64,000 nt of DNA from Leucoraja ocellata (taxonomy: Eukaryota): positions 4,030,001 to 4,094,000 of the forward strand of contig JAWMAR010000204.1 of the NCBI GenBank assembly GCA_036785375.1, read 5' to 3'. The translations under genes and the position numbers were made by a program. A model generated the notes under the pieces. That model was given only the letters and a program-made list of their open reading frames with translations. It did no database searches and had not been told where the DNA came from. Position 1 is the first letter of the stretch. Each line of letters begins with the position of its first letter. Positions 2,845 through 35,790 of this stretch are shown piece by piece.

Positions 2845-3540
2845 GAAGTTAATACAGTACAAAACAGTAGTGGAACCAATTTTAGGTGCCAACTATGTCA
2901 TACCGTAATCCATTCTATGTACAACCTCTAGTTTTTATGTTTTGAGAAGGAAGTAAGCAAGACAAGAACAAGAAAACAATAGAAAGGGGAATAAGAGGAA
3001 AAATAGCTGGTAGAGAATAGAAAACGTGAAGTGTGTATATAAAAAAAAGAAAAAGTGGAAATAGGAGAAAAGGCCCCTGAAAAGAGAAAATTTCAAATCT
3101 TTATTTGGAGATGTAGATCTATGCACGGCATGAACTGAAATCAGCAATCTTTACGGTACCGCTGCATCACATGATTCCAAAAAGTCGATGAAAGGAGACC
3201 AACTCCTTAAGAATTGGTCATATTTATCTATTAGTCGGAGACTCATTTCTTCAAGGCGTGCTATGTCCATCATATTCCTAATCCACATTTTAACAGTTGG
3301 TATGGTTGTATTTTTCCAAAATTTACGTATCAATTTCTTTCCAATTATTAACCCATAATTAAAAAAAAGTTTTGGTCTTTATTTAAATTGATATCGTCTA
3401 CTATTATTCCAAATATAATCCATTCCGTTTTAGGTTCTATTCTTGACTTGAAAAGCTTTGTAAATATATCAAATATATCGCTCCAAAATTTATTCAACTT
3501 TGTACATCCTACAAATGAATGTGTTATATTAGCGTTTTGA
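2845..3540 (-). mobile_element. L1-clade LINE 3' end (paralog 25470-26175 +)
   Basis: Encodes KKLIRKFWKNTTIPTVKMWI...FLRSWSPFIDFL, typical of the fish L1 ORF2 C-terminus. Confidence 0.8.
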
Positions 3541-4292
3541 AAAATAGCGAGGAATTATGATAAACCTTTCATAGGTTTCTAGCTGATGTAATCCTTCCAG
3601 TTCTTGGCACCAAATTACGTCCAAAATCAAAGTCCCACAAAGCTGATCTACAAGAATGAAGCCATGTTTTTGGAATCTCTATTTTATTGAGAAAAGCTTG
3701 GTTTATTTAACAGGGCAGAGGTGGAGTGAAGGTGAGATTTGAAGCATACTGTATATCCAATATCCAGTATATCATGAAATATAAAATGGAGGAAGGACGA
3801 TGAAAGTGTTGCTCGTGGCAAAAGCATCATTGACGGATGTGGAGAAATTTGCAGAAGAAACACAAGGAAAAGAGTTGTTAATCTGGAGTTTCTCTCTGAA
3901 AAGGCAATGGAAGCAGATTTGATGGTAACTTTCAATAAAGAGTTAGTTGGAAGAACTATCAAAGCAGAGAAATTTGCCTGGCTTTGAAAATAGCTGAATA
4001 CTTGAATATCACTTATACATAACCAGCAAAGACATCTGTGCTGAATGACCTGCTGTCAACCTCATTCTATGAGTTAATATTGGAGACTTTCCCTTATAGG
4101 GAAGAGATAGAAGATTTGGCATTATATTTAGGAACAGACAAATACATTTTAGAATGCCATGTATTTAATGCTTAAATCATATCAGAGATACAATCCTTTT
4201 TATTTAGAATTAAAATCAGTTCACCAAAAAAACATTTGTAGGTATAAAACCTATTTCATCACCTCAGGATACCATTGTGGCAATGAACCCCT

Positions 4293-4404
4293 TCAAAATG
4301 TATCCGACTTTTCAGTTTTGGTCAGTAAGCCAATAATAAGCATCTTCACCCAGAGAGCCTTCCCACTCAAACAAACTTCTTTACGTGGGTTAATCTGATG
4401 AGCT
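4293..4404 (-). pseudogene. Orphan CXC chemokine exon 3 (copy D; promoter, exon 1 and exon 2 deleted)
   Basis: The minus strand reads tttcag|A..AHQINPRKEVCLSGKALWVKMLIIGLLTKTEKSDTF* (stop TAG changed to TCG). At ~4580-4590 intron-2 sequence is joined directly to far-upstream sequence, equivalent to deleting ~12690-14077 of copy A. Confidence 0.85.
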
Positions 4405-4960
4405 CTGAAAGAAAAAGGGAGGCATTTTATCTTTCTAGTTATTAGAATTTTTTGAGGGGATGGGGGAAGGGGGGGGGGGGGGGAGGGGTGATAAATTGCA
4501 ACATCATTTAATTGTCAGAGTTCTCTTGTTTGTTCCTTTCACTTGTGGCAGATGATCTGCCGATAAAATGCAATTCATACAATTTTAAGTTACAATGAGC
4601 ACACCCCCACCCGTTTCAACCTTTCTCACACAAGACAATCCATATCCAAGTGAACATTCTGTGAAGTGTCTCTAATAATTATCTATTGTTCCTTAAATAA
4701 CAGGGTCACAAAACTGCTCACGTACTCTAATGTTGTCTCACTAATGTCTTACGCAGTAGCCGTAAGTTTCCCTGCATTTATATTCCATCTCTTTGAAATG
4801 AAAGGCAAGTTTCTGCTGCCTTCCTGATCCGTGCTGCACCTAAGAGAAACTTCTGTATTCATGCTGCATGTTTCTGTTATCTTTTGCCATTTAAATCATA
4901 ATTTGACTACACATCCTCTCTGCCTTTTGAATGGACGCCATCTCTTATTCTTAATAACCG

Positions 4961-10785: not shown

Positions 10786-13134
10786 AAGGATGATTGTGTG
10801 ATGGTCTGAGCTGGGCTCTGTCCCACAATTGGCTGCAATTTCTTGCGGTCTTGGATGGAGCTGTTCCCAAACCAAGCTGAGATCCATCCTGATGAAATAC
10901 TTTCTTGTCATCACAATTCACTTTAAGTATTACTGAATGTTTTTAAATTGTGAGAATTCTGCTCAATATAATGTCCCTGCCTCGTTCACCAATGATAGAG
11001 TACAAATTGTGGTGGTGACCCCATGAGTTAGCACTCAAACTGTTTTTGATTTCACAACACAATTAGAACAGGTTGTTGCACAACATTTCACAACCTGTAT
11101 TCATGGGCCATCCCTTCTCATGAGTTTATCTCCATCTTTAATATGTTTATTTGATCTCCATGGTCAAATCTTGCATCAATGCAGACTGTACATTGAATAT
11201 TACTGTCCTCTCAGTAATTTGCAGTCTTTCAGTAATTATCAGCACTCGGCTCCTTAGTTCACTCAGCGCTACTATCTGGAAAAACACAACAAATATTTGT
11301 GAGTTGATCCTCTATTATTCCACATAATTAAGTGGAGAAAGAGCATGAAATGAGCTGTAATCCCGGCCCCATTTACTTTGCATACAGTAGGCTGGTTGGT
11401 TGCTCCTGGATACACACAGTTTACATCACTGGAGCAATGTCTTAATCTGTTCATCTATCAATGTTTATATCAGCGTGCAATTAGTGCTCCACTTAATAAG
11501 TTCTTAATTAGTGGTCGCAGCCCAGACCATCACACAATCCAACATCTATTCCATTGGCCCTATCTAAATTTCATGCAGCCTTGGCAAAGCCACCGGCATA
11601 ATTAAGGACGAGTCTCACTCCAGACATTCCCTCTTCTCCCATCAGCGATACAAGATACAAGATACATTAATTTGTCACATGTGCCAGTTGGCACAGTGAA
11701 ATGTGTTCACCGTACAGCCATACAATACAAATAAGAACACAACACACGATAGAGTTCAAACATAAAACATCCCCACACAGCAGAATCAAAGTTTCCCAGT
11801 GTGAGGGAAGGTACCAAAGTCAGTCTCTCCTCTAATGTTCCCCAATGTTCACCCGTGGTCGGGGCCTCCCCCGAGCCTTCCGCAGTCGCCGCTACGGGCG
11901 GCCCGATGTTCAGGCTCGCTTGCCGGGGTGATGTAAGTCCGGCGTCGGGGCTGGGGGACCTCCTCAGTGGCTTGGACATCATAGTCGGCCACCTCCTACC
12001 GGAGTCCACGGCTCCCAAAGTCCGGAGGCCGTGCCGGGCGGAGATTCAACGCTGGCGGCCCTCGGCAAAGGGCCCCAGGACTCCGCGATATTGAAGTCAG
12101 CGCCGCCCGCGCTGGGGGCTCTCCCAAACCGCTGCTCCACGATGTTGGAGCAGCGGCGTAACACTCCGGAGCTCCAAACGGCGTTCCAGGTAGGCATCGC
12201 CCGCTCCACGGTGAATTTAGCACTGCCCCGCCGCTATTGAAGCTCTGGTCCAGTTCCCGGTCCCCGGCAGGAAAGGCCGCTCCGATCCAGGTGGTAGGCT
12301 GCAAGGACGCGGTTATTAAGAATAAGAGATGGCGTCCATTTCAAAAGGCAGAGAGGATGTGTAGTCAAATTATGATTTAAATGGCAAAAGATAGCAGAAA
12401 CATGCAGCATAAACACAGAAGTTTCTCTTGGGTGCAGCACGGATCAGGAAGGAAGCAGATACTTGCCTTTCATTTCAAAAGAGATGGAATATAAATGCAG
12501 GGAAACTTACGGCTACTGCGTAAGACATTAGTGAGACAACATTAGAGTACGTGAGCAGTTTTGTGACCCTGTTATTTAAGGAACAATAGATAATTATTAG
12601 AGACATTTCACAGAATGTTCACTTGGATATGGATTGTCTTGTGTGAGAAAGGTTGAAACGGGTGGGGGTGTGCTCATTGTAACTTAAAACAATGAGAGCT
12701 CATCACACTGAAACATAAACATCCTGAGGGGGTGTGGCAGCCGTGTGTTGGAAAGATGATCCTGCTTGTAGTAAAGTCTGGGACCAAAACACACCAACGC
12801 AGAATAAGGTGGAGATGTCATTTATGAATGAGACAAGGAAGAATATCTTCTCTCAAATATCGGTGACTTATCTGAATTCCTTATCCCAGGAAAGGCTGAA
12901 CCTTTGAATATATTCAAAGTGGAGAAAAATGTATGATCTGTAAAAGAATCGAGTGTAATGGGACAGGGTGGGAGAGCAGATTTGGAACGTTGTGTTAGCC
13001 ATGGTTTTATTGAGCATGAGAGAGGCTCAAGTGCTGAATGGCCTGCTCCTGTTCCAACTTCCTACTGTCTCCGTCACACCATTAACTTGTTTTCAGCTTT
13101 TTTTTTAAACAAACTGTCTATTTTGATATAATCT

Positions 13135-13270
13135 ACAAATTGCAACATTTCTGCTTATTATTAATTTGACTATCTTGATGTAATCAGTGTTTTCTGTTGC
13201 ACCAGTGACCAGTGGCCGTTGCAATTTCATTATATTGAGCAACCCCTAGTTATTCAGAATATAAATTACA
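13135..13270 (+). promoter_or_regulatory. Chemokine promoter: TATA box and C/EBP-like sites (repeated upstream of copies B and C)
   Basis: TATAAAT at 13260-13266, ~84 nt before the ATG. Also ATTGAGCAAC (13234-13243), TTGATGTAAT (13175-13184) and GTTGCAAT (13218-13225). Confidence 0.6.
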
Positions 13271-13343
13271 GAGCAAATAGAAGACACCAAGAAAAACCAA
13301 CTGGATCAGAAAGGCAAGGCTCGAGAAGACTGGAACTCCGACA

Positions 13344-14351
13344 ATGAACTACAGAGTTAGTGCTACACTCCTGCTGCTGCTTGGAATTTGTGCAGCTTTG
13401 TCTATGGGTGAGGAAAATACCCTAGATCTTGTCATTTAGAGTCTTTTAGCTTTATAGTTGTAATTAGATTTTTGATTCATTCAGCCAGTTGAAGGAACAG
13501 AAGACAGTTCAACGAATGTTCACTTGGATAATATTAGATATGGATTGTCTTATAATAAATGGATGAAGCGGGTGGGTCTGTACTCATTGTAATTTTAAAA
13601 ATGAGCGGTGATCACACTGAAACATAGAATCCTGAGTGGGTTTGGCAGGTTCTGATTCAAAGACAGTGTGTGTTTTCCAGGTTGTTCTATTTGATGTTCA
13701 GGCTTGCAGGTTACTATGTGTCCAGATGGAACTTGATGTTTCCTTCCTCGGTCTTAGAATAGGCCTTGTTGTAACAGCGCAGAAGGCCAAAGAAGGGGCC
13801 ACATTGTGAACACTGAAAGTAATAAAACTAATTTTAAGGAATATGTCTTTACAACTTGTCATTTGTCTTACAGCGGCTCATAAAGATATCAATTTAGGAT
13901 CACGATGTAGGTGCAGTACGTGTTCAACAAATCGCATGTCCGTGGGTAATATTCATAAAATTGAAATCATCGCAGCGAACAAAGAGTGCAATTACGCGGC
14001 AATCATGTAAGAATTGTTCATGCATTTAAATTTTCATGTTTATATTTCAATGGGTGGGATTCGTGATAATGTGGAGAAATTGTATGAATTGCATTTTATC
14101 GGCAGATCATCTGCCACAAGTGAAAGGAACAAACAAGAGAACTCTGACAATTAAATGATGTTGCAATTTATCCCCCCTCCTCCCCCCCTTCCCCCATCCC
14201 CTCAAAAATTCTAATAACTAGAAAGATAAAATGCCTCCCTTTTCCTTTCAGAGCTCATCAGATTAACCCACGTAAAGAAGTTTGTTTGAGTGGGAAGGCT
14301 GACTGGGTGAAGACGCTTATTATTGGCTTACTGGCCAAAACTGCACAGTAG
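13344..14351 (+). CDS. CXC chemokine copy A (intact, ELR-negative, 98 aa); exons 13344-13407, 13874-14006, 14252-14351
   Basis: Translation: MNYRVSATLLLLLGICAALSM-AAHKDINLGSRCRCSTCSTNRMSVGNIHKIEIIAANKECNYAAII-AHQINPRKEVCLSGKADWVKTLIIGLLAKTAQ*. It has a signal peptide, R-CxC, IxKIEII..C, VCL....WVK and GT-AG introns of phase 1 and 2, as in CXCL genes. A TATA box lies upstream and AATAAA downstream. Confidence 0.92.
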
Positions 14352-14451
14352 GATACATTTTGAAGGGCTTCATTGCCACAATGGTATCCTGAGGTGATGA
14401 AACAGGTTTTATACCTACAAATGTTTTTTTGGTGAAGTGATTTTAATTCTA

Positions 14452-14493
14452 AATAAAAAGGATTGTATCTCTGATAATGATTTAAGCATTAAA
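14452..14493 (+). terminator. Candidate polyadenylation signals of chemokine copy A (AATAAA 14452, ATTAAA 14488)
   Basis: Hexamers 100-140 nt after the stop codon, present in all four copies. Confidence 0.5.
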
Positions 14494-16672
14494 TACATGG
14501 CATTCTAAAATGTATTTGTCTGTTCCTAAATATAATGCCAAATCTTCTATCTCTTCCCTATAAGGGAAAGTCTCCAATATTAACTCATAGAATGAGGTTG
14601 ACAGCAGATCATTCCGCACAGATGTCTTTGCTGGTTATGTATAAGTGATATTCAAGTATTCTCACCTCTAGCTCTTCAAATCCCAACCACCACCAAAACT
14701 CCGCCACCATTTCAGTTATTTTCAAAGCCATGCAAATTTCTCCGCTTTGAAAGTTTTTCCAACTAACTCTTTATTGAAAGTTACCATCAAATCTGCTTCC
14801 ATTGCCTTTTCAGAGAGAAACTCCAGATTAACAACTCTTTTCCTTGTGTTTCTTCTGCAAATGTCTCCACATCCGTGCCCTCTATAGTCACTGATGCTTT
14901 TGCCATGAGCAACACTTTCATCATCCTTCCTCCATTTTATATTTCATGATATACTGGATATTGGATATACAGTATGCTTCAAATCCCACCTTCACTCCAC
15001 CTCTGCCCTGTTAAATAATCCAAGCTTTTCTCAATAAAATAGAGATTCCAAAAACATGGCTTCATTCTTGTAGATCAGCTTTGTGGGACTTTGATTTTGG
15101 ACGTAATTTGGTGCCAAGAACTGGAAGGATTACATCAGCTAGAAACCTATGAAAGGTTTATCTTAGTTCCTCGCTATTTTTTAATTCTATGATGAGATGG
15201 ACAATGCGCAGAATCCCTGTTTCCTTTTTTAATGGCAGTCATTGGCACATCAGGATGGAGGTGATTGAACTTTCCTGATCTGATGACATTGTAAATCCAG
15301 GGGCACGATACTACACCCGACTACGCTTTTTCCAGACACATCTTTCCAGCCACTGCTCCATTCTTTTCAGGGTCTCTATTACTTTGTCATTCACCTTTTC
15401 TCTGTCGGTAACACAAGGAACATTAAATTAAAGTAACCAGAGTAATGTGGATGAATGGCCTTTAGTTTAAGAACATACTTCATATTATTTTCAGCTATAA
15501 GCAGCATGGCACAGCAAGAAATGTGTCTGTCAAGAGCTTGCTATATTATATGTATGAAAAACTGCGTGCGTGCAAGTTTTGTTAATAAACTGCTTTGAAT
15601 CCAATAATCGTATCCTGGTCATCATTTTAAAGAGACACAGGGAGATTGATATGGAACACCAAAGTATCCCCTCCACAAGTCCAAGGAAGTGCAAGAAGTG
15701 GTCTTGTGTGTTCTGTTGCTGAGGTACGATTAGATTTGTTCGGGTCAGTTCAAGAACCTGTCGGTGTAAGAGAGTAACTATTCCTGAACCTGGTGTTGCG
15801 GTGAGTAGTGATCGATGATTCTAACCAGGAGCGTCTAGGACCAGGGGTCGTAGCCTCAGAATAAAATGGTGTTTCTTTAGGAAGTAGATAAGGAGGAATT
15901 TCTTCAGTCAGAGGGTGGTGAATCTGTGAAATTCATTGCCACAGAAGGCTGCGGAGGCCAGGTCAATGGATATTATTAAGGCACTTAGATAGATTCTTGA
16001 TTAGTAAGCATGTCAGGGGTTATGTGGAGAAGGCAGGAGAATGGGGTTGAGGGGGAGAGATAGGTAAATTCTCGTAAACCTCCTCTGGACCCTCTCCAAC
16101 ACCAGCCCATCTTTCTTCAGATATGGGACCCAAAACTGTTCACATTAATCCAAAGGCAGACTGACCAGTGCTTTATGAAGCCTCAGCATTGCATCCCTGT
16201 GTTTGTATTCTAGTCCTCTTGAAATAAATGCTAACATTGTATTTGCTTTTCTTACTAGTGATTATGCAATTTCTCAATATAACTAATGTATAAATCCAAG
16301 GATGCCATCTACCCTTGTGCACCATTCCAAACTTGCCCTGCCAGAGACTTGTGTGGCCCCTCCTTCAGTCCTGCCTCCTACTGTAACGTCACTACTCCAG
16401 TTACAGTATGTTGCCCCTCTACATACTCAAACATTTCTCTTCACATTTTGGTCCATGAGATTTCACTCACCATGTGTCTGCGCACTTCACCAGCCTGTCT
16501 CTGATTCTTGTCCCTCCCACAGTTTACACTATTATATGTTTCCATGTAGTCTGACAAACCAACCTTTCACCCAACTCTGTGCCTTGTCATCGGGTTAAAT
16601 ATACATACAAACTGATTGTCCGTGTCGCAAGAGACACACTGCTGTTAATAATAATAATAATAATAATAATAA

Positions 16673-16820
16673 ATAGGCACGGCCATTATAATTCGGAAAG
16701 GCATACCTTTTAAATTAAAGAAATCCATATCTGATAAAGAGGGAAGATATGTTATAGTCACGGGAGAAATTTACAATACACCATTAACTATGATAAATAT
16801 TTACCCGCCTAATTTTGATA
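16673..16820 (+). mobile_element. Internal L1 endonuclease fragment embedded in an (AAT)n tract (paralog 38161-38308)
   Basis: Translates IGTAIIIRKGIPFKLKKSISDKEGRYVIVTGEIYNTPLTMINIYPPNFDN (APE motifs GxAI, D..GRY, NIYAPN). Confidence 0.8.
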
Positions 16821-16821
16821 A

Positions 16822-18118
16822 TAATAAATAAATGTTATTACGGACTCGAGGTGCAGACAAGGGGCCACATTACATTAAAATGCATTGCATATTAAATATC
16901 ATAAAGTATATATAAATTATATCAAAAAAAAACAACACAATACAGAAGTTAAAAATCCAGATTAAAAGAATGATCAATGTCCTACAACGAGACAAGGATA
17001 CCAGTGTCTCCACAGCTGGGATTCGTAGCGTGTAGTGCTAACCCTTATGTTTGACAAGGCCACAATAATCACATTTTTAGAGTCATTTATCCTACAATGA
17101 ATACATGTGATGTCTTAGGATAGCTTCTAAAGTACTGACTCCTGCAGCCACAAACATATTACTGGCACTACACCATCTAGGTTTCCTTAGCAGTGTTCTC
17201 ATGGCATCGTTATATGCCACCTTTAGTCTCTGCATACTTGTCTTTCCATAGTTCGACCACAGGTGCGCAGTGTAGAGTGGTGTGCAGTATGCTCTAAATA
17301 GCGACATCTTCACCACACCTGCACACGCACCAAATTTACGCAATAGAATATTCGCCTGTACATACAGCATGCGTCGTTGCCTATAAATATCCTCATCATC
17401 TGTCATTTGTTCTGTAATAATATCCCCTAGATATTTTACCTTATTACAGACACTAAGATTATTGTCAGACAATTTAAAATCAGGAAATTGTAGACATTTA
17501 TCCTCTTTGGTTCTACAGATCATAACAGCACTCTTACTAGCATTATATTTAATCTCATGTTCCACACCATACACAGAACATATAGTAAGGAGCTGCTGGA
17601 GGCCAGCGCTAGTTGGACTAAAGACCACAAGATCATCTGCGTACATAATATGGTTCACTAAAATATTACCAATCACGCACCCAGTGTTACAGGCCTTCAG
17701 TTGTTTAGACAGATCATCAATATACAGATTAAAAAGGACTGGGGACAAAATCCCCCCTTGTCTAACACCATTGCTAACCCCAAATGTGGCTGAGACCCTA
17801 TTGCCCCATTTTATTTGCATAGTCTGGTGGGCATACCAGTACGCCAGAATTCTAACAATGTATTTAGGCAACCCTCTTTGACTCATTTTACCAAACAGCT
17901 TTCTGTGATTAACACAGTCAAAGGCTTTGGAAGCATCAATAAAGCACATAAGGATTGAAGAGTTTTTGCCTCTATATTTGTTTACAATCTCCTTTAGGGC
18001 ATACTGTATATGCATAAGTCAGTGCCATGTTTAGCTTTAAAGCCAAACTGGTTATCTGTGGAGTTAACAAACTCATTTATTCTATCCAGCAGAACTCTTT
18101 CTAAAACTTTTGACAAGA
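16822..18118 (-). mobile_element. RTEX-like LINE, 5'-truncated reverse transcriptase
   Basis: ORF 17092-18015 with FIDASKAFD, GVRQGGILSPVLFNLY, YADD, KYLG and LFRAYCTPLY motifs; (TTA)n tail. Confidence 0.85.
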
Positions 18119-18799
18119 ACAATGGAAAAACGTTTAATAATGTTGCACTGAATAAGGCTGCTTGTTCTATTGTGTGTCTGTCAGCTCTGTGAACGCCCAT
18201 CTATACATCAATCATACCACCCTCAGCAACATTTTTTGTTAAATTATCCAAGATCTCAAGGCCAGCATTTATTCCCACCTCGAACTTTTGTTTAGTGTCA
18301 CGTGTACCGAGGTACAGTGAAAAGCTTTTGTTGCCTGCTATCCAGTCAGCAGGAAGACAAAACATGATTGCAATTGAGCCATTTACAGTGTATAGATACA
18401 TGATAAGGGAATAACGTTTAGTGCAAGGTGAAGCCAGCAAAGTCCGATCAAGGATAGTCCAAGGGTCACCAATGAGGTAGATAGTAGTTCAGCATTGCTC
18501 TTTGGTTGTGGTCGGATGATTCAATTGACTGATAACAGCTGGGAAGAAACAGCCCCTGAATCTGGAGGTGTGCGTTTTTACACTTCTATACCTTTTGCCT
18601 GATCGAAGAGGGGAGAAGAGGGAATGGCCAGGGTGCAACTCGTCCTTGATTATGCTGCTGGCCTTGCCAAGGCAGCGTGAGGTATAAATGGAGTCAATAG
18701 AAGGAAGGATGGATTGTGTGATGGTCTGAGCTGGGCTCTGTCCACAATTGGCTGCAATTTCTTGCGGTCTTGGATGGAGCTGTTCCCAACGCAAGCTGA

Positions 18800-19550
18800 T
18801 TAGGAAAAGAAGAGATGTACCGAGACCTGGGTGTCATGGTACACCAGTCATTGAAAGTAGGCATGCAGGTGCAGCAGGCAGTGAAGAAAGCGAATGGTGT
18901 GTTAGCATTCATAGCAAAAGGATTTGAGTATAGGAGCAGGGAGGTTCTGCTGCAGTTGTACAGTGTCTTGGTGAGACCACACCTGGAGTATTGCGTACAG
19001 TTTTGGTCTCCTAATCTGAGGAAAGACATTCTTGCCATAGAGGGAGTACAGAGAAGGTTCACCAAACTGATTCCTGGGATGGCGGGACTTTCAGATGAAG
19101 AAAGACTGGATATACTAGACTTGTTCTCTCTGGAATTTAGAAGATTAAGGGGGATCTTATAGAAACGTACAAAATTCTTAAGGGGTTGGACAGCCTAGAT
19201 TCAGGAAGATTGTTCGCAATGTTGGGGAAGTCCAGAACAAGGGGTCATAGTTTGGGGATAAGGGGGAAGTCTTTTAGGACCGAGATGAGAACATTTTATT
19301 TCACACAGTGAGTGGTGAATCTGTGAAATTCTCTGCCACAGAGGGTGGTTGAGGCCAGTTCATTGGCTATATTTAAGAGGGAGTTAAATGTGGCCCTTGT
19401 GGCTAAAGGGATCAGGGGGTATGGAGAGGAGGCAGGTACAGGATACTGAGTTGGATGATCAGCCATGATCATATTGAATGGCGGTGCAGGCTTGAAGGGC
19501 CGAATGGCCTAATCCTGCACCTTTTTTCTATGTTTTCTACATTTCAATGT
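18800..19550 (+). mobile_element. CR1 LINE 3' fragment (paralog 40275-41020)
   Basis: ORFs 18815-19162 and 40289-40918 carry CR1 motifs. Confidence 0.9.
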
Positions 19551-21881
19551 AAGCTGGGATCCATCCTGATAAAATGTTTTCTTGTCATCACAATTCCCTT
19601 TAAGTATTACTGAATGATTTTAAATTGTGAGAATTCTGCTCAATATAATGTCCCTGCCCTCGTTCACCAATGATAGAGTACAAATTGTGGTGGTGACCCC
19701 ATGAGTTAGCACTCAAACTGTTTTTGATTTCACAACAATTAGAACAGGTTGTTGCACAACATTTCACAACCTGTATTCATGGCCCACCCTTCTCATGAGT
19801 TTATCTCCATCTTTAATATGTTTATTTGATCTCCATGGTCAAATCTTGCATCAAAGCAGACTGTACATTGAATATTACTGTCCTCTCAGTAATTTGCAGT
19901 CTTTCAGTAATTATCAGCACTCGGCTCCTTAGTTCACTCAGCGCTACTATCTGGAAAAAAACAACAAATATTTGTGAGTTGATCCTCTATTATTCTACAT
20001 AATTAAGTGGAGAAAGAGCATGAAATGAGCTGTAATCCCGGCCCCATTTACTTTGCATACAGTAGGCTGGTTGGTTGCTCCTGGATACACACAGTTTACA
20101 TCACTGGAGCAATGTCTTAATCTGTTCATCTATCAATGTTTATATCAGCGTGCAATTAGTGCTCCACTTATTAAGTTCTTAATTAGTGGTCGCAGACCAG
20201 TCCATCACACAATCCAATATCTATTCCATTGGCCCTATCTAAATTTCATGCAGCCTTGGCAAAGCCACCGGCATAATTAAGGACGAGTCTCACTCCAGAC
20301 ATTCCCTCTTCTCCCATCAGCGATACAAGATACAAGATACATTAATTTGTCACATGTGCCAGTTGGCACAGTGAAATGTGTTCACCGTACAGCCATACAA
20401 TACAAATAAAGAACACAACACACGATAGAGTTCAACATAAAACATCCCCACACAGCAGAATCAAAGTTTCCCAGTTTGAGGGAAGGTACCAAAGTCAGTC
20501 TCTCCTCTAATGTTCCCCAATGTTCACCCGTGGTCAGGGCCTCCCCGAGCCTTCCGCAGACGCCGCTACGGGCGGCCCGATGTTCAGGCTCGCTTGCCGG
20601 GGTGATGTAAGTCCGGCGTCGGGGCTGGGGGACCTCCTCAGTGGCTTGGACATCATAGTCGGCCACCTCCTACCGGAGTCCACGGCTCCCAAAGTCCGGA
20701 GGCCGTGCCGGGCGGAGATTCAACGCTGGCGGCCCTCGGCAAAAGGCCCCAGGACTCCGCGATATTGAAGTCAACGCCGCCCGCTCTGGGAGCTCTCCCA
20801 AACCGCTGCTCCACGATGTTGGAGCAGCGGCGTAACACTCCGGAGCTCCAAACGGCGTTCCAGGTAGGCATCGCCCGCTCTGCGGTGAATTTAGCGCTGC
20901 CCCGCCGCTGTTGAAGCTCTGGTCCAGTTCCTGCTTATTGTAACTTTAAAACAATGAGAGCTCATCACACTGAAACATAAACATCCTGAGGGGGTTTGGC
21001 AGCCGTGTGTTGGAAAAATGATCCTGCTTGTAGTAAAGTCTGGGACCAAAACACACCAACGCAGAATAAGGTGGAGATGTCATTTATGAATGAGACAAGG
21101 AAGAATATCTTCCCTCAATTCAGATTCAGATTCAGATTCAATTTTAATTGTCATTGTCAGTGTACAGTACAGAGACAACGAAATGCATTAATACATCAAA
21201 TATCGGTGACTTATCTGAATCCCTTATCCCAGGAAAGGGCTGAATTTTTGAATATATTTCAAAGTGGAGAAAATGTATGTTCTGTAAAAGAATCGAGTGT
21301 AATGGGACAGGGTGGGAGAGCAGATTTGGAACGTTGTATTAGCCATGGTTTTATTGAGCATGAGAGAGGCTCAAGTGCTGAATGGCCTGCTCCTGTTCCA
21401 ATTTCCTACCGTCTCCGTCACACCATTAACTTGTTTTCAGCTTCTTTTTTTAAAAACAAACTGTCTATTTTGATATAATCTACAAATTGCAACATTTCTG
21501 CTTATTATTAATTTGACTATCTTGATGTAATCAGTGTTTTCTGTTGCACCCGTGACCAGTGGCCGTTGCAATTTCATTATACTGAGCAACCCCTAGTTAT
21601 TCAGAATATAAATTACAGAGCAAATAGAAGACACCAAGAAAAACCAACTGGATCAGAAAGGCAAGGCTCGAGAAGACTGGAACTCCGACAATGAACTACA
21701 GAGTTAGTGCTACACTCCTGCTGCTGCTTGGAATTTGTGCAGCTTTGTCTATGGTGAGGAAAATACCCTAGATCTTGTCATTTAGAGTCTTTTAGCTTTA
21801 TAGTTGTAATTAGATTTTTGATTCATTCAGCCAGTTGAAGGAACAGAAGACAGTTCACCGAATGTTGACTTGGATAATATT

Positions 21882-23876
21882 AGATGGCGGACTGCGGGGG
21901 TGATGCGCCGTTGTGTATGGCTGCTCCTCCTGCGGTCCGTCCTTTCTCCCTTTTTTTTTAAATTTATTTTTAGTCCAATTCCTCCCTCTCCCTCCCTACC
22001 TCCTCCTCTTAATCCCCCCCACTCTCTCTCCTCACCTCCCCGGGATCGCGATGTAGGCCACCGCCAGCTCCGTTTTCTCCACAACGTCGGGGATTGAGTT
22101 GTGCTTGAGGTCGGGGGGGGGGGGGGAGGCTGAGCGGCCTGGAGCCGCGGGGGGGGGGGAGGCTGAGCGGCCTGGAGCCGCGGGGGGGGGGGAGGGAGGC
22201 TGAGCGGCCTGGAGCCGCGGGGGGGGGGGAGGGGAGGCTGAGCGGCCTGGAGCCGCGGGGGGGGGGGGGGGGAGGCTGAGCGGCCTGGAGCCGCGGGGGG
22301 GGGAGGCTGAGCGGCCTGGAGCCGCGGGGGGGGGAGGCTGAGCGGCCTGGAGCCGCGGGGGGGGAGGCCTGAGCGGCATGGAGCCGCGGGGGGGGGGGGG
22401 GGGGGGGGAGGCTGAGCGGCATGGAGCCGCGGGGGGGGGGGGGGGGGAGGCTGAGCGGCCTGGAGCCGCTGGGGGGGGGGGGGGGGGAGGCTGAGCGGCC
22501 TGGAGCCGCGGGGGGGGGGGGGGGAGGCTGAGCGGCATGGAGCCCGCGGGGGGGGGAGGGGAGGCTGAGCGGCCTGGAGCCGCTGGGGGGGGGGGGGGGG
22601 GGAGGCTGGAGCGCTGGGCCGCGGGGGGGGGGGGGGGGGAGGCTGAGCGGCCTGGAGCCGGGGAGGCCGAGACTGCGGCCTAGTCCTTGCCCCGGGTCCC
22701 GCTCCTCTCCCTTCCCGTGGGCCAGGTGCGGCAGCGGCCGCCGCCCCCAGACCTCGCCCCAGCCTCATCGCCGTGGTGATTTCGGGTCCACACACGCGGA
22801 TGCCGGGCCCACGCAAGGGGCGACTTTCAGTTGTTTTTGGATCTGCACGCGTGGATACCCTCAGTCACTTCCTCCCACCCTCCATTAACCCCTCTCCCCT
22901 CCCTACCTCCCTCCTCTCCCTCTATCCCCCTTCTCCCCTTATCTCCCTTCTCTAAGATGGCGGACTGCGGGGGTGATGCGCTGTTGTGTATGGCTGCTCC
23001 TCCTGCAGTCCGTCCTTTCTCCCTTTTTTTTTATTTTTGTTTTTAGTCCTGTCTGTGGGAACTTTTAATTGGAAGTCTTCTTTTCTGTGGTGGGTGGGGG
23101 GGGGGGGAAGGGGGAAACTGTTTTGATCCCAGTCCTACCTGGTCGGAGATGCGGTTTTCTTCCGGACCGCTTCTTCGTCCTCTCTGTGCGGCCTACCATC
23201 GAGCTGGAGCAGTGCTGGAGCGACGATTTCCTGCCGGGACTACAGCTTCGCCGGCGGTGCAGATGCTGGGACACCAACACCAACACGGAGCGGGCGATGG
23301 CTTACCGGATCGCCTTCGGGTAAGCTCCGGGGCACTGGGAACGCCGACTGCAACATCGCTGAGCTGCGGCTGCAGAGCGTCCAGCCGCGGGCGGGTGGCC
23401 CAGGATTTTAACACCACGGGGCCTGGTGTCCGAGTTCGCCAATGTCAGCGGTCCAGCCAGCGCGGCCTGAGAACTTTGGACATTGCAGTCTTCAGGGAGG
23501 AAGTGGCCGCTTCAGTCCAGGCCGCTGAAGAATGTTCACCCGACGCCGATGATCCAGCTTCGCGGCAGAGGGCCTGAGAAAATCGAGTTGGCTGAGGAGG
23601 CCACATATAGACCCCGACCTCGGGTGGACTATGAGGGGGAGAGCTGGATATTTTTAGTGCCTTCCTCACAGTGAATTCTGCTGTGGGGGGACGTTTCATG
23701 TTGATTTCTATAGTGTACTGTTCTGTGTCTTTTTCTTTTTCTCTTTTTTGTTTTTGTATATATTGACATTTGGTCTGTTCTATTAATTTAATCAAACTCT
23801 GTAAAGCACTTGGTTCAAATACTGGTTTTGTTGAAAAGTGCTATATAAATAAAGATTATTATTATTATTATTATTA
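21882..23876 (+). mobile_element. ~2 kb GC-rich non-autonomous retroelement in intron 1 of chemokine copy B
   Basis: Absent from copies A and C at the site GATAATATT|AGATATGG. It starts AGATGGCGG, its ~90-nt head is repeated at 22955, and it ends AATAAA plus (TTA)n. Confidence 0.8.
22112..22665 (+). repeat. G-rich minisatellite (Gn-AGGCTGAGCGGCCTGGAGCCGC), roughly 16 units
   Basis: Directly visible tandem repeat with variable poly-G spacers. Confidence 0.95.
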
Positions 23877-25469
23877 GATATGGATTGTCTTATAATAAAT
23901 GGATGAAGCGGGTGGGTCTGTACTCATTGTAATTTTTAAAATGAGCAGTGATCACACTGAAACATAGAATCCTGAGTGGGTTTGGCAGGTTCTGGTTCAA
24001 AGACAGTGTGTGTTTTCCAGGTTGTTCTATTGGATGTTCAGGCTTGCAGGTTACTATGTGTCCAGATGGAACTTGATGTATCCTTCCTCGGTCTTAGAAT
24101 AGGCCTTGTTGTAACAGCGCAGAAGGCCAAAGAAGGGGCCACATTGTGAACACTGAAAGTAATAAAACGAATTTTTAAGAAATATGTCTTTACAACTTGT
24201 CATCTGTTTTACAGCGGCTCATAAAGATATCAATTTAGGATCACGATGTAGGTGCAGTAAGTTTCAACAAATCGCATGTCCGTGGATAATATTCATAAAA
24301 TTGAATCTTCACCGTGAGCAGAAAGTGCAATTACGTGGAAATCATGTAAGAATTGTTCATGCATTTAAATTTTCATGTTTATATTTCAATGGGTGGGATT
24401 CGTGATAATGTGGAGAAATTGTATGAATTGCATTTTATCGGCAGATCATCTGCCACAAGTGAAAGGAACAAACAAGAGAACTCTGACAATTAAATGATGT
24501 TGCAATTTATCCCCCTCCTCCCCCCCCTTCCCCCATCCCCTCAAAAATTCTAATAACTAGAAAGATAAAATGCCTCCCTTTTTCTTTCAGAGCTCATCAG
24601 ATTAACCCACGTAAAGAAGTTTGTTTGAGTGGGAAGGCTCTCTGGGTGAAGACGCTTATTATTGGCTTACTGACCAAAACTGCACAGTAGGATACATTTT
24701 GAAGGGCTTCATTGCCACAATGGTATCCTGAGGTGATGAAACAGGTTTTATACCTACAAATGTTTTTTTGGTGAAGTGATTTTAATTCTAAATAAAAAGG
24801 ATTGTATCTCTGATATGATTTAAGCATTAAATACATGGCATTCTAAAATGTATTTGTCTGTTCCTAAATATAATGCCAAATCTTCTATCTCTTCCCTATA
24901 AGGTAAAGTCTCCAATATTAACTCATAGAATGAGGTTGACAGCAGATCATTCCGCACAAATGTCTTTGCTGGTTATGTATAAGTGATATTCAAGTATTCA
25001 GGTATTTTCAAAGCCAGGCAAATTTCTCTGCTTTGATAGTTCTTCCAACTAACTCTTTATTGAAAGTTACCATCAAATCTGCTTCCATTGCCTTTTCAGA
25101 GAGAAACTCCAGATTAACAGCTCTTTTCCTTGTGTTTCTTCTGCAAATTTCTCCACATCCGTGCCCTCTAGTCACTGATGCTTTAGCCACGAGCAACACT
25201 TTCATCGTCCTTCCTCCATTTTATATTTCATGATATACTGGATATTGGATATACAGTATGCTTCAAATCTCACCTTCACTCCACCTCTGCCCTGTTAAAT
25301 AAACCAAGCTTTTCTCAATAAAATAGAGATTCCAGAAACATGGCTTCATTCTTGTAGATCAGCTTTGTGGGACTTTGATTTTTGGACGTAATTTGGTGCC
25401 AAGAACTGGAAGGATTACATCAGCTAGAAACCTATGAAAGGTTTATCATAATTCCTCGTTATTTTTAAA

Positions 25470-26175
25470 AACGATAATATAATTCATTTGTAGGATGTAC
25501 AAAGTTGAATAAATTTTGGAGCGATATATTTGATATATTTACAAAGCTTTTCAAGTCAAGAATAGAACCTAAAACGGAATGGATTATATTTGGAATAATA
25601 GTAGACGATATCAATTTAAATAAAGACCAAAACGTTTTTTTAAATTATGGGTTAATAATTGGAAAGAAATTGATACGTAAATTTTGGAAAAATACAACCA
25701 TACCAACTGTTAAAATGTGGATTAGGAATATGATGGACATAGCACGCCTTGAAGAAATGAGACTCCGACTAATAGATAAATATGACCAATTCTTAAGGAG
25801 TTGGTCTCCTTTCATCGACTTTTTGGAATCATGTGATGCAGCGGTACCGTAAAGATTGCTGATTTCAGTTCATGATGTGGATAGATCCTACATCTCCGAA
25901 TACAGATTTTGAAATTTTCTCTTTTAAGGGGCCTTCTCTCCTATTTCTACTTTCCACTTTTTCTTTTTTTTTTTATATACACACTTCACGTTTTTCTACT
26001 CTCTACCAGCTATTTTTCCTCTTTTCCCCTTTCTATTGTTTTCTTTTTCTTGTCTTGCTTACTTCTTTCTCAAAACATAAAACTAGAGGTTGTACATAGA
26101 ATGGATTACGGTATAACATAGTTGGCACCTAAAATTAGTTTCCACTGGACTGTTTTGTACTGTATTAACTTCTAA
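25470..26175 (+). mobile_element. L1-clade LINE 3' end
   Basis: ORF 25505-25852 FWSDIF...IIFG...KKLIRKFWK...WSPFIDFL. Confidence 0.8.
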
Positions 26176-27321
26176 TACGCGGGTCCCCAGTGGGAGACCG
26201 CTTTGCCGGCACCGGCAACGGCGACTTCTCCCGCCCGAATTGCGAGGTTGAGAGTGACCTGGAGCAGGGCCTTACAACGCCCGGCGCGGCTTTGATTTGC
26301 CGCGGACTTGCCAGCGCCCGCCGGGGGCTCCAACGCCAAGTTCCGGGGCAGGGCCTTACATCGCCCGGCGTGGCTTTGAGTGGCCGCGGACATGCTAGCG
26401 CCTGCCGGGGCCTTTGACTGCGACTTCGGGAGAGGAATGGAGAGCAGGGGAGAGATAAGACTTTGCCTTCCATCACAGTGAGCAGGAGACTCACTGTGAT
26501 GGATGTTTGTGTAAATAGTCTTGGTGTGTGTCTTGGTTCTTTCCTTGTAAGGCTGCAGACACCAAATTTCGTTTGAACCTCATGTGAGTATTGTAATAAA
26601 ATAAACAACAACAAAAAACACCAACAAAATAAATAAATAACACAAAATGCTAGAAGTGCTGAGAAACTGAGCAATTATGTTGATCTCATTGCCATTAGTG
26701 GTTTGTTGCAGAAAATGGATGCTTTTTGTGCACAGTGGTAATGTTTCAAAAGCATGTTACTGGCTGTGAAGAACTTGCAATTGGTAAGGAAGTGAACAAT
26801 GTTGTGTGAATGCAAATTCTTCTTCTCCATGCGAGAAGTAGGATATAAGTAGGGCCAGCATTTATTAGTTGTCCATAATGCAGCAACATGCACCATAGAT
26901 GTATATCACACATATAAAGCCAATGATAATGATTGTTTCATTAAACTAAATACATTACAAAAAAATAAAAAATAATAATTCCTCTCTATTTTTTAATTCT
27001 ATGATGAGATGGACAAAGCACAGAATCCCTGTTTCCTTTTTTAATGGCAGTCATTGACACATCAGGATGGAGGTGATTGAGCTTTCCTGATCTGATGACA
27101 TTGTAAATCCAGGGGCACGACACTACACCCGACTACGCTTTTTCCAGTCACATCTTTCCAGCCACTGCTCCATTCTTTTCAGGGTCTCTAATACTTTGTC
27201 ATTCTTCTTTTCTCTCTCGGTAACACGAGGAACATTAAATTAGAGTAACTAGGGTAATGTGGATGAACATTCTTAAGGAGTTGGTCTCCTTTCAACAACT
27301 TTTTTTGTGTAGAGTAATTGT

Positions 27322-27988
27322 GAAAGAAGGCGAATGGTATGTTAGCATTCATAGCAAAAGGATTTGAGTATAGGAGCAGGGAGGTTCTACTGCAGTTGTA
27401 CAGGGCCTTGGTGAGACCACACCTGGAGTATTGCGTACAGTTTTGGTCTCCTAATCTGAGGAAATACATTCTTGCCATAGAGGGAGTGCAGAGAAGGTTC
27501 ACCAGACTGATTTCTGGGATGTCAGGACTTTCATATGAAGAAAGACTGGATAGACTCGGTTTGTACTCGCTAGAATTTAGAAGATTGAGGGGGGATCTTA
27601 TAGAAACTTATAAAATTCGTAAGGTTGTTGGACAGGCTAGATGCAGGAAGATTGTTCCCGATGTTGGGGAAGTCCAGAACAAGGGGTCACAGTTTAAGGA
27701 TAAGGGGGAAATCTTTTAGGACCGAGATGAGGAAAACCTTTTTCACACAGACAGTGGTGAATCTCTGGAATTCTCTGCCGCAGAAGGTAGTTGAGGCCAG
27801 TTCATTGGCTATATTTAAGAGGGAGTTAGATGTGGCCCTTGTGGCTAAAGGGATCAGGGGGTATGGAGAGAAGGCAGGTACAGGATACTGAGTTGGATGA
27901 TCAGCCATGATCATATTAAATGGCGGTGCAGGCTCAAAGGGCCGAATGGCCTACTCCTGCACCTATTTTCTATGTTTCTATGTTTCTA
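27322..27988 (+). mobile_element. CR1 LINE 3' fragment, specific to type II units
   Basis: ORFs 27339-27719 and 27625-27891. The empty site ATGTGGATGAATGGCC is seen in type I units (~15444). Confidence 0.9.
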
Positions 27989-28732: not shown

Positions 28733-28803
28733 TGTGGGGGGTGGGGGTGGGGGGGGGGGTGGGGGTGGAGGGGGTGGGGGGTGGGGGGGGGGTGGGGCGG
28801 GGG
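28733..28803 (+). repeat. G-run low-complexity tract (paralog 222-305 on -)
   Basis: (GGGGGT)n / poly-G tract. Confidence 0.85.
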
Positions 28804-34777: not shown

Positions 34778-35790
34778 ATGAACTACAGAGTTAGTGCTAC
34801 ACTCCTGCTGCTGCTTGGAATTTGTGCAGCTTTGTCTATGGGTGAGGAAAATATCCTAGATCTTGTCATTTAGAGTCTTTTAGCTTTATAGTTGTAATTA
34901 GATTTTTGATTCATTCAGCCAGTTGAAGGAACAGAAGACAGTTCAACGAATGTTCACTTGGATAATATTAGATATGGATTGTCTTATAATAAATGGATGA
35001 AGCGGGTGGGTCTGTACTCATTGTAATTTTAAAAATGAGCGGTGATCACACTGAAACATAGAATCCTGAGTGGGTTTGGCAGGTTCTGATTCAAAGACAG
35101 TGTGTGTTTTCCAGGTTGTTCTATTTGATGTTCAGGCTTGCAGGTTACTATGTGTCCAGATGGAACTTGATGTTTCCTTCCTCGGTCTTAGAATAGGCCT
35201 TGTTGTAACAGCGCAGAAGGCCAAAGAAGGGGCCACATTGTGAACACTGAAAGTAATAAAACTAATTTTAAGGAATATGTCTTTACAACTTGTCATTTGT
35301 CTTACAGCGGCTCATAAAAATATCAATTTAGGATCACGATGTAGGTGCAGTACGTGTTCAACAAATCGCATGTCCGTGGGTAATATTCATAAAATTGAAA
35401 TCATCGCAGCGAACAAAGAGTGCAATTACGCGGCAATCATGTAAGAATTGTTCATGCATTTGAATTTTCATGTTTATATTTCAATGGGTGGGATTCGTGA
35501 TAATGTGGAGAAATTGTATGAATTGCATTTTATCGGCAGATCATCTGCCACAAGTGAAAGGAACAAACAAGAGAACTCTGACAATTAAATGATGTTGCAA
35601 TTTATCCCCCCTCCCCCCCCCCCCCCTTCCCCCATCCCCTCAAAAAATTCTAATAACTAGAAAGATAAAATGCCTCCCTTTTTCTTTCAGAGCTCATCAG
35701 ATTAACCCACGTAAAGAAGTTTGTTTGAGTGGGAAGGCTGACTGGGTGAAGACGCTTATTAGTGGCTTACTGGCCAAAACTGCACAGTAG
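34778..35790 (+). CDS. CXC chemokine copy C (intact, 98 aa); exons 34778-34841, 35308-35440, 35691-35790
   Basis: Same structure as copy A. It differs by two codons seen by eye (GAT>AAT D>N in exon 2; ATT>AGT I>S in exon 3). Splice sites are intact. Confidence 0.92.

What the first reader, a model, noticed from the sequence alone, without database searches (positions are those of the whole stretch)
13874..24690. Chemokine paralogs differ almost only at amino-acid-changing sites while intron 2 is nearly identical
Seen (by eye, after restoring copy B's 1-nt gaps): exon 2 of A vs B differs in 11 codons, all non-synonymous (T>K, C>F, G>D, I>F, A>T, A>V, N>S, K>R, E>K, A>V, A>E). Exon 3 differs by D>L and A>T. 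The 245-nt intron 2 differs only in C-run lengths and about one base, and exon 1 shows no substitutions. A vs C has two differences, both non-synonymous; the orphan exon 3 adds four more non-synonymous changes. Changes cluster in the N-loop and in the segment before the third canonical Cys (IIAANKEC vs IFTVSRKC), which in chemokines is the receptor-specificity N-loop/30s-loop region. Copy B gains positive charge. Inference: strong diversifying selection on young duplicates.
Basis: partly seen in the sequence, partly recalled or inferred. Interest (0 to 1): 0.85.

Follow-up and report, generated by a model that had tools for sequence, protein, structure and literature searches.

The report
Broken chemokine copy with dense exon patch
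One of three tandem chemokine gene copies carries a compact block of amino-acid-changing differences in a receptor-contact loop, but this copy is broken here and lies in an array reshuffled by gene conversion, so selection is possible but not shown.

Summary
The pattern is real, but it is narrower and messier than described. The window holds three head-to-tail copies (A, B, C) and one inverted, beheaded copy (D) of a three-exon CXC chemokine gene. A and C are intact. B differs from A in exon 2 by 11 substitutions (10 replacement steps, 1 silent step), 7 of them within 16 nt. It therefore cannot encode a chemokine.

- **Codon test:** dN/dS is not significant (13 N : 1 S, p=0.155).
- **Against non-coding DNA:** exon 2 is 4x more diverged (8.4% vs 2.1%, p=3e-4). 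The excess disappears if the 16-nt cluster is counted as one event (p=0.16).
- **Intron 2 is a poor yardstick:** non-coding divergence between A and B ranges from 0.4% to 3.4%, and site patterns conflict, so the array is a mosaic.
- **Controls:** a non-coding repeat holds an even denser patch, and dead copy D also shows only replacement changes.
- **Reads:** independent contigs carry B's block, probably with an intact frame.

Best reading: a conversion-type patch in a mosaic array (0.45). Diversifying selection stays open (0.33). Ordinary for chemokine arrays.

The parts
13344..13407 (+). Copy A exon 1 (coding part, 64 nt, signal peptide, intron phase 1)
   Evidence: ATG, 21 codons + G, donor gtgagg
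13874..14006 (+). Copy A exon 2 (133 nt): CXC motif, N-loop, first strand, 30s loop, third Cys ('type 1')
   Evidence: Acceptor ...ttacag, donor gtaaga. Translation. Pfam IL8 E=0.003, 18.1 bits, below the 21.3-bit cut-off.
14007..14251 (+). Copy A intron 2 (245 nt). It differs from B only by one base (14244) and a C-run shift.
14252..14351 (+). Copy A exon 3 (100 nt including the stop): fourth Cys and C-terminal helix with a WV motif
   Evidence: Translation. Pfam IL8 E=0.082. AATAAA at 14452.
21691..21753 (+). Copy B exon 1, 63 nt. One G of the terminal GGG is missing, so the intron phase becomes 0.
   Evidence: Alignment. In all 3 DNA runs laid, every contig covering the site has the G put in behind 21752. 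Those contigs are A/C-like, so this does not test B itself.
21886..23870 (+). Insertion of about 2 kb in intron 1 of B: a high-copy dispersed repeat with an (ATT)n tail and short target-site repeat, absent from A and C
   Evidence: Contig depth in the thousands and RNA reads only here. G-rich tandem array at 22113-22660, period 31-37.
24215..24345 (+). Copy B exon 2 (131 nt): two 1-nt deletions (after 24262 and 24303) and 11 substitutions
24260..24339 (+). The 'type 2' block: all 11 substitutions and both exon-2 deletions, with 7 substitutions at 24308-24323
   Evidence: No stretch of 30 identical bases between A and B lies inside it, so a 31-mer contig cannot switch type within it. A 1204-nt contig of run X1 carries it.
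24346..24590 (+). Copy B intron 2
24591..24690 (+). Copy B exon 3: GA>CT (D>L) and G>A (A>T), both shared with D
34778..34841 (+). Copy C exon 1, intact
35308..35440 (+). Copy C exon 2, type 1, one change (D>N)
35691..35790 (+). Copy C exon 3, one change (I>S)
3540..4585 (-). Copy D: an inverted, beheaded copy (3' part of intron 2, exon 3 at 4404-4305, downstream DNA). The equivalent of A 12690-14076 (promoter, exons 1-2) is deleted. The stop codon is lost.
   Evidence: Self-comparison (4583-7414 matches 12689-9846; 3996-4585 matches 14661-14077)..
19045..19175 (.). Control: a non-coding patch inside a dispersed repeat. The A-unit vs C-unit copies differ at 12-15 of 131 positions here, against 2.2% overall.

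Best explanation
The locus is a tandem and inverted array of a three-exon CXCL8-like chemokine gene upstream of JCHAIN. It was built by repeated segmental duplication and has since been reshuffled by gene conversion.

A and C are intact 'type 1' genes. B is a disabled copy in this assembly: three frameshifting 1-nt deletions, an early stop and a repeat insertion in intron 1.

The A/B contrast in exon 2 is one compact 80-nt linked block ('type 2'). I read it as a patch. Either it was imported by interlocus gene conversion from a diverged copy outside the window, or it is an older stretch whose flanks were homogenised with A/C. I do not read it as a series of recent, independently selected point changes in B.

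The near-identity of intron 2 is a conversion tract, not a clock. The block is rich in replacement changes, so whatever lineage it came from evolved without the usual constraint (omega about 1 or higher). That is where adaptive change of the 30s loop may have come in.

- **Shown:** gene models, the breaks in B, the block, mosaic divergence, and a denser patch in non-coding DNA.
- **Inferred:** conversion as the mechanism, and the existence of a donor or an intact type-2 gene elsewhere.
For: - **B is broken.** One base is missing at the end of exon 1 and two in exon 2. Exon 2 read from B's exon 1 stops after 7 codons.
- **The differences are clustered.** 7 of 11 substitutions fall in 16 nt (scan p=0.0012 within the exon, 3e-5 over the whole A-B alignment). 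Both exon-2 deletions lie within 5 nt of a substitution. With the cluster counted as one event, exon 2 is not enriched (5/131 vs 42/1987, p=0.16).
- **The array is a mosaic.** A-B non-coding divergence is 2.6% in intron 1, 0.4% in intron 2, 0.65% in the 3'UTR and 3.4% downstream (with shift artefacts removed as). This heterogeneity has p=9e-4. In the four-way region all three partitions occur: AC|BD 12 events, AB|CD 4 (2 of them homopolymer lengths), AD|BC 2. B groups with A/C in the 3'UTR but with D downstream of the 52-nt indel.
- **Inverted repeats that favour conversion are present.** 4583-7414 vs 9846-12689 (97.2%) and 1-4585 vs 24416-29022 (95.8%).
- **Control.** In about 20.6 kb of non-coding duplicate alignments, one 131-nt window is denser than exon 2 (19051-19182: 12 vs 10 under the same gap-friendly aligner). 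It also has no in-window donor.
- **Dead copy D** has 3 substitutions within 7 nt at the end of its reading frame, and only replacement changes.
- **The indel-to-substitution ratio in B's coding DNA** (3/294) is no different from non-coding DNA (12/1987, p=0.30). This is what DNA free of frame constraint would show.
- **The block is real sequence.** A contig of run X1 covers 23887-24632 with only 5 other letters, none listed in exon 2.
Against: - No donor was found. Only A, B, C and D match the exon peptides in the window (the weak hits at 43.9 and 49.9 kb are not chemokine exons).
- B's 25-nt block core is unique in the window at up to 3 mismatches. An 11-mer scan found only a 13-nt inverted match.
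- Nothing outside the window could be searched for eukaryotic DNA.
- The block has 10 replacement steps and 1 silent step. That fits a neutral or adaptive source but not an ordinary constrained old paralog (my estimate).
- Even after allowing tenfold CpG mutability, 11 changes in exon 2 remain unlikely (expected 4.6 of 56, p=0.005).
- The X1 contig has a net length of +1 and 5 gaps over 23887-24632. That is exactly what A-like states at all five A/B indel sites would give. So the type-2 block probably exists with an intact frame, and the two deletions would then not have been imported with it. This is arithmetic, not shown directly, because 15 gap rows were hidden.
Confidence: 0.45

Rival explanations
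1. Diversifying (positive) selection. Type 2 is, or recently was, a working chemokine whose N-loop and 30s loop were remodelled by selected replacement changes. B's frameshifts are then recent null mutations, an allele, or assembly errors.
For: - dN is 3.6x the non-coding divergence (p=2.5e-4), while dS equals it.
- Six consecutive codons before the third Cys each carry a replacement. The changes map to the N-loop and 30s loop (alignment).
- Net charge is +2.
- The type-2 block in the X1 contig probably has an intact frame, and that contig lacks the intron-1 insertion and has the exon-1 G.
- Positive selection in tandem CXC chemokine duplicates is documented for CXCL1-3 (PMC5627130, passages read).
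Against: - The codon test has p=0.155.
- There are only 14 changes, strongly clustered and next to indels.
- B is broken three times here. Three frameshifts in 294 nt is more than expected if B died only recently (P(>=3)=0.06 even if it was dead for the whole time).
- A denser patch occurs in non-coding DNA, and dead copy D shows the same pattern.
- There were no RNA reads on any exon in the one RNA run laid (about 5 in 100 of that run was read).
Confidence: 0.33
2. Neutral decay of a pseudogene. B has been free of constraint since it arose. The exon-2 excess comes from CpG decay plus one or two complex multi-base mutation events tied to the deletions (indel-associated or template-switch mutagenesis).
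For: - Exon 2 holds 9 CpG in 133 nt, against 20 in 2032 nt of non-coding DNA. By my reading, 3 of the 11 changes are CpG transitions and 1 is a CpG transversion.
- Both deletions abut substitutions.
- The N:S ratio does not differ from neutral (p=0.155).
- D shows a 3-in-7-nt cluster, and B/D share a GA>CT tandem change.
Against: - Seven substitutions in 16 nt is far more than known multi-base events usually give.
- CpG weighting leaves p=0.005-0.02.
- No nearby template was found.
- If the block exists with an intact frame in X1 (inferred), the substitutions and deletions are not one event.
Confidence: 0.12
3. Assembly or consensus artefact. The block and/or the three 1-nt deletions of B are errors of the assembly in a hard-to-resolve duplicated region.
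For: - All contigs of the three DNA runs that cover the end of exon 1 have the extra G.
- The X1 contig arithmetic suggests both exon-2 bases are present there.
- Homopolymer lengths differ between copies in the C-runs.
Against: - The block's substitutions are carried by an independent 31-mer contig.
- The deletions are not in long homopolymers (a G in GTGTT; A3>A2; G3>G2).
- A and C share the same sequence context and have no such errors.
- Contigs covering exon 1 are A/C-like and say nothing about B.

For the deletions alone I put the chance of error at about 0.25. For the block it is under 0.05.
Confidence: 0.08

Closest known systems
CXCL8-like 'cluster A' cxcl genes next to jchain in cartilaginous fish (Kawasaki, Ohta, Castro, Flajnik 2024, PMC10801876; abstract, results and start of discussion read)
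   Same: - CXC genes in an array upstream of, and on the same strand as, a J-chain-like gene. An ORF ending in ...TCY lies at 60792-60995 (first-reader note s1-885585).
- Intron phases 1 and 2, with the signal peptide ending at the exon 1/2 border.
- CXC motif in exon 2 and a WV motif in exon 3.
   Different: - Three exons, with the stop in exon 3, instead of four.
- No ELR before the CXC motif (the residues are G-S-R).
- An extra Cys three residues after the motif.
- The species is not known to me. The paper's datasets S1/S2, which list shark cxcl genes, are supplements I could not open.
Positive selection in tandem CXC duplicates CXCL1-3 (GRO) of mammals (PMC5627130; passages read)
   Same: These are recent tandem CXC duplicates. 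Selected sites include first-strand/dimer-interface residues just before the third Cys.
   Different: That study used many species and site models, and found no gene conversion by GARD/GENECONV. Here there are four sequences, one of them broken, and signs of mosaicism.
[quoted passage not shown]
   Same: Introns are more conserved than protein-coding parts of exons. Short surface segments of an exon are replaced wholesale between isoforms.
   Different: The gene family is different, and the toxin isoforms are expressed and intact. Here the copy carrying the switched segment is broken, and no second carrier was seen directly.
Concerted evolution by patchy interlocus gene conversion in tandem and palindromic arrays (general knowledge, recalled; no paper read for it here)
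   Same: Divergence between the same two copies varies in a mosaic fashion, site partitions conflict, and inverted repeats flank the genes.
   Different: The donor of the exon-2 block was not identified, so conversion is inferred, not shown.

Membership tests
CXC chemokine (Pfam PF00048, IL8-like) | Four conserved cysteines, the first two spaced C-X-C | tested here: met
   A and C: C-R-C, then a third Cys in exon 2, and a fourth Cys in exon 3. In B the pieces lie in three frames.
CXC chemokine (Pfam PF00048, IL8-like) | Profile match above the curated cut-off | tested here: inconclusive
   Searched exon by exon only. Exon 2: 18.1 bits (E=0.003). Exon 3: 13.5 bits (E=0.082). The cut-off is 21.3 bits. 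The two hits cover profile positions 1-34 and 41-57, in order. The joined protein was not searched. PDB best match is CXCL10 at E=0.79. There were 0 hits in 1.84 billion representatives.
CXC chemokine (Pfam PF00048, IL8-like) | Gene structure: signal peptide in exon 1, intron phases 1-2(-2), CXC motif in exon 2 | tested here: met
   Phases 1 and 2 with GT-AG borders in A and C. There are three exons rather than four.
CXCL8-like (cluster A) as defined in PMC10801876 | ELR motif, a Glu, and a WV motif at set positions; linkage to jchain in cartilaginous fish | tested here: inconclusive
   WV is present. ELR is absent. The Glu position was not aligned. A J-chain-like ORF lies about 25 kb downstream of C but was not verified by a family search.
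Gene pair under diversifying selection | dN/dS significantly above 1 | tested here: not met
   Nd=13, Sd=1, N=171.7, S=47.3, one-sided Fisher p=0.155
Gene pair under diversifying selection | Replacement rate above an independent neutral yardstick | tested here: inconclusive
   13/172 vs 42/1987, p=2.5e-4. The test assumes independent sites, and the yardstick itself is heterogeneous (p=9e-4).
Gene pair under diversifying selection | Both members intact and expressed | tested here: not met
   B has three frameshifts. There were 0 RNA reads on the exons of any copy in run X24 (about 5% of the run was read, tissue unknown).
Interlocus gene conversion patch | Phylogenetic incongruence and heterogeneous divergence along the copies | tested here: met
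Interlocus gene conversion patch | An identified donor carrying the tract | tested here: not met
   No donor in the window. The rest of the genome cannot be searched with these tools.
Unprocessed pseudogene | Frame-breaking lesions confirmed in the individual's reads | tested here: inconclusive
   The lesions are present in the assembly. The read contigs either come from other copies or (X1) probably lack the exon-2 deletions.

The most novel reading that the evidence does not exclude
The receptor-contact 30s loop of this chemokine is exchanged between array members as a short cassette, by templated micro-conversion. Broken copies such as B would serve as a reservoir of loop variants. This would be an ASSET-like or pseudogene-donor mode of diversification, not described for chemokines as far as my two chemokine searches show. 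First-reader notes on other immune genes of the same genome report similar multi-base block substitutions (s1-885156; unchecked).
Probability: 0.12. Interest if true: 0.6.

Novelty: new member of a known kind. Interest (0 to 1): 0.3.

Why it matters
If type 1 and type 2 are both working genes, they would be a natural pair of CXCL8-like chemokines differing almost only in the N-loop and 30s loop. They would sit in the ancestral chemokine/J-chain neighbourhood of (by synteny) a cartilaginous fish. That would give a direct handle on which loop residues set receptor choice.

The case is also a methodological caution. In tandem and palindromic arrays, an exon-versus-intron contrast between two copies is confounded by patchy gene conversion. 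Here one non-coding repeat shows a denser patch than the exon, and a beheaded copy shows the same 'replacement only' pattern.

Tried and rejected
- **Other chemokine exons in the window as donors.** tblastn of the three exon peptides found only A, B, C and D. Two weak hits (43860, E=0.099; 49870, E=0.015) lie in repeat-like DNA with no CXC exon between them. Rejected.
- **Nearby template for the block.** The 25-nt core is unique at up to 3 mismatches. The 11-mer scan gave only a 13-nt inverted match at 21134-21146, in B's own upstream insertion. I treated this as likely chance in AT-rich DNA.
- **Relatives elsewhere.**
  - The search for homologous proteins with the 66-residue open frame around exon 2: no candidate.
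  - Exon 2 against 1.84 billion representatives: 0 hits at E<=0.001.
  - Two exact-pattern scans of metagenome contigs: 0 and 0.
- Earlier findings by sequence: blank.
- **An apparent second cluster of A/B differences upstream (12901-12925).** This is an alignment shift between two 1-nt indels, not a real cluster. I moved 7 mismatch columns there and 4 in the intron-2 C-runs from 'substitution' to 'indel' before the counts.
- **Excess of indels in B's exons.** Not significant (3/294 vs 12/1987, p=0.30). Dropped as an argument.
- **AID-type hotspot context of the changed bases.** I looked by eye only and saw nothing notable. No call was made, so no claim.
- Pfam, PDB, the protein libraries and the codon counts were all run exon by exon. 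The two split codons, identical in A, B and C, are left out of the codon counts. No structure was predicted for the spliced protein, and B was never read through its breaks.
- **Not seen.** The supplements of PMC10801876 (datasets S1/S2 with shark cxcl genes) could bear on the gene's name and on other copies.

Full report
**What is there**

A self-comparison of the window and alignments show three head-to-tail copies of a three-exon gene on the + strand.

| Copy | Exon 1 | Exon 2 | Exon 3 |
|---|---|---|---|
| A | 13344-13407 | 13874-14006 | 14252-14351 |
| B | 21691-21753 | 24215-24345 | 24591-24690 |
| C | 34778-34841 | 35308-35440 | 35691-35790 |

- A and C have GT-AG borders, intron phases 1 and 2, and an open frame of 98 codons counted exon by exon.
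- A fourth copy, D, is inverted (4585 down to 3540). It lacks the equivalent of A 12690-14076, that is the promoter, exons 1-2 and the start of intron 2. Its exon 3 (4404-4305) has lost the stop codon.
- The array contains long inverted repeats: 4583-7414 vs 9846-12689 at 97.2%, and 1-4585 vs 24416-29022 at 95.8%.

**What the gene is**

- Searched exon by exon, exon 2 matches the Pfam chemokine profile at E=0.003 (18.1 bits) and exon 3 at E=0.082 (13.5 bits). They cover successive parts of the profile, and each is below the 21.3-bit cut-off.
- The best solved structure is CXCL10 at a non-significant E=0.79. That alignment lines up the CXC motif and the third Cys.
- Neither protein library returned a relative, so the gene is a divergent CXC chemokine.
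PMC10801876 (abstract, results and start of discussion read) reports that in sharks, rays and elephant shark jchain lies downstream of the CXCL8-like cxcl cluster, with intron phases 1-2-2. The window fits that picture. I did not verify the J chain or the species.

**The observation**

Five corrections are needed.

1. 'C>F' is a codon hit by a 1-nt deletion, not a substitution.
2. GCA>ACC includes a silent step, so exon 2 has 10 replacement steps and 1 silent step.
3. Together with the two exon-2 deletions, B's chemokine-like pieces lie in three frames. Reading on from B's exon 1 meets a stop after 7 codons.
4. B carries a roughly 2-kb insertion in intron 1. It is a dispersed repeat with contig depths in the thousands.
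5. Only intron 2 is nearly identical. The 3' part of intron 1 differs by 2.6% and the downstream flank by 3.4%.

**Statistics**

- Codon test, exons 2 and 3 apart, split codons left out: Nd=13, Sd=1, N=171.7, S=47.3, one-sided Fisher p=0.155.
- Against aligned non-coding DNA (42 substitutions in 1987 positions, after moving 11 shift-artefact columns to indels), the results are:

| Comparison | Counts | p |
|---|---|---|
| Exon 2 vs all non-coding | 11/131 vs 42/1987 | 2.7e-4 |
| Exon 2 vs the two most diverged non-coding strata | 11/131 vs 26/814 | 0.008 |
| Replacement changes vs non-coding | 13/172 vs 42/1987 | 2.5e-4 |
| Exon 2 with the 16-nt cluster as one event | 5/131 vs 42/1987 | 0.16 |

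- The single silent change (1/47) equals the non-coding rate.
- The changes are not independent. Seven lie in 16 nt (scan p=0.0012 within the exon, 3e-5 over the alignment), and both exon-2 deletions are within 5 nt of a substitution.
- Exon 2 is CpG-rich: 9 CpG in 133 nt against 20 in 2032 nt. Tenfold CpG mutability raises the expectation from 3.2 to 4.6 of 56 changes, leaving p=0.005.

**The yardstick**

- Intron 2 plus the 3'UTR (3/551) is significantly less diverged than the rest of the non-coding DNA (39/1436; p=9e-4).
- In the region where all four copies align, all three possible two-by-two partitions occur: AC|BD 12 events, AB|CD 4 (two of them homopolymer lengths), AD|BC 2.
- B is closest to A/C in the 3'UTR but closest to D beyond the shared 52-nt indel.
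- The copies are therefore mosaics, and local divergence varies for reasons unrelated to protein selection.

**Controls**

- I realigned about 20.6 kb of non-coding duplicates from the same window with a gap-friendly aligner. Windows of 131 nt with 8 or more substitutions occur five times. One of them (19051-19182, inside a dispersed repeat) has 12, against 10 for exon 2 under the same aligner.
- A multiple alignment of that repeat's copies shows real substitutions and no in-window donor.
- Dead copy D has four unique changes in exon 3, all replacement or stop loss, three of them within 7 nt.

**Reads**

- I laid 4 of the 24 listed runs on 21400-25000.
- The RNA run X24 gave no reads on any exon bin. 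All of its depth lies between 21763 and 23940, that is the insertion and its edges. About 5 in 100 of the run was read, so this says little.
- In run X1, a 1204-nt contig skips the insertion, has the exon-1 G, and covers 23887-24632 with only 5 other letters. Four are listed, all in intron 1. An A-type contig would differ at 21 or more positions. The type-2 block is therefore present in independent 31-mer data.
- No 30-nt stretch inside the block is shared between the types, so the block cannot be a chimera.
- That contig piece is one base longer than the window and has 5 gaps. This equals the sum expected if it is A-like at all five A/B indel sites: -1 at 24172, +1 and +1 at the two exon-2 sites, and +1 and -1 in the C-runs. 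I take this as indirect evidence, about 70%, that the block exists with an intact frame. The gap rows themselves were among the 15 not shown.
- The A/C-like flanks of that contig could be a graph chimera.
- Contigs of X4 and X7 (other coded organisms) are C-like up to the block and then stop aligning.

**Reading**

- Two explanations remain. I favour a patch (0.45). The block would be a linked stretch imported from, or left over from, a more diverged copy, sitting in flanks homogenised by conversion, in a copy that is broken here.
It would gain if the deletions prove to be errors or recent, and if site models on many copies give omega above 1.
- An ordinary constrained old paralog is an unlikely donor. 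Ten replacement changes would then come with roughly ten silent ones in the block, and only one is seen (my estimate).
- Neutral decay with complex mutation events (0.12) and an assembly artefact (0.08) are less likely.

**Comparison and novelty**

- Rapid, loop-focused divergence of tandem CXC duplicates is known (PMC5627130; passages).
- Introns more conserved than coding exons, and wholesale switches of short exon segments, are known from snake toxin genes (PMC7285919; passages).
- This is a new member of a known kind. It has modest interest unless the cassette-like exchange of the 30s loop proves real.

Noticed in passing
window 21886-23870: The insertion in B's intron 1 looks like two tandem units of a dispersed retroposon-like repeat. 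The same 5' end occurs at 21886 and 22957. It has an AATAAA signal, an (ATT)n tail and a short target-site repeat. Inside is a G-rich 31-37-nt tandem array at 22113-22660. Contig depth is in the thousands in three DNA runs, and RNA reads map on it.
   Followed up: partly
window 21117-21197: An 81-nt insertion specific to B, about 500 nt upstream of its start codon, beginning with (CAGATT) repeats. It is absent from A and C.
   Followed up: no
window 3540-7414 and 9846-12689: Copy D and copy A lie head to head. Their upstream regions form a 2.8-kb inverted repeat (97.2%) around a 2.4-kb spacer. D's deletion joins the equivalents of A 12689 and A 14077 at a short GGGTGGG-like similarity.
   Followed up: partly
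window 19045-19175 vs 40514-40645: A non-coding patch inside a dispersed repeat. The copies differ at 12-15 of 131 positions here, although the surrounding 3.5-kb duplicate differs by 2.2%. The A-unit copy has states not seen in any of the 7 other in-window copies aligned.
   Followed up: partly
window 60792-60995: An ORF ending in ...TCY followed by a few residues. This fits the published linkage of jchain and cxcl genes. It was not checked with a family search.
   Followed up: no
window 24296-24308 and 21134-21146: A 13-nt exact inverted match between the 5' edge of B's dense cluster (including the second deletion site) and B's own upstream 81-nt insertion. It may be chance in AT-rich DNA.
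   Followed up: no
window 24226 (= C 35319): The base that gives C its D>N change is the only state seen in the contigs of runs X4 and X7, which are two other coded organisms. Asn may therefore be the older state, and the Asp of A and B the newer one.
   Followed up: no
window 13921-13923 (A), 24261-24262 (B): A and C have an extra Cys three residues after the CXC motif (also noted in s1-885149). B's first exon-2 deletion falls in exactly this codon.
   Followed up: no
runs X15 and X20: Two small 2016 runs, guessed to be RNA, of the best-holding organism hold 17% and 7% of the sampled words of 23869-24999. That is about the share that exons plus 3'UTR make up. It may be a hint of expression.
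   Followed up: no
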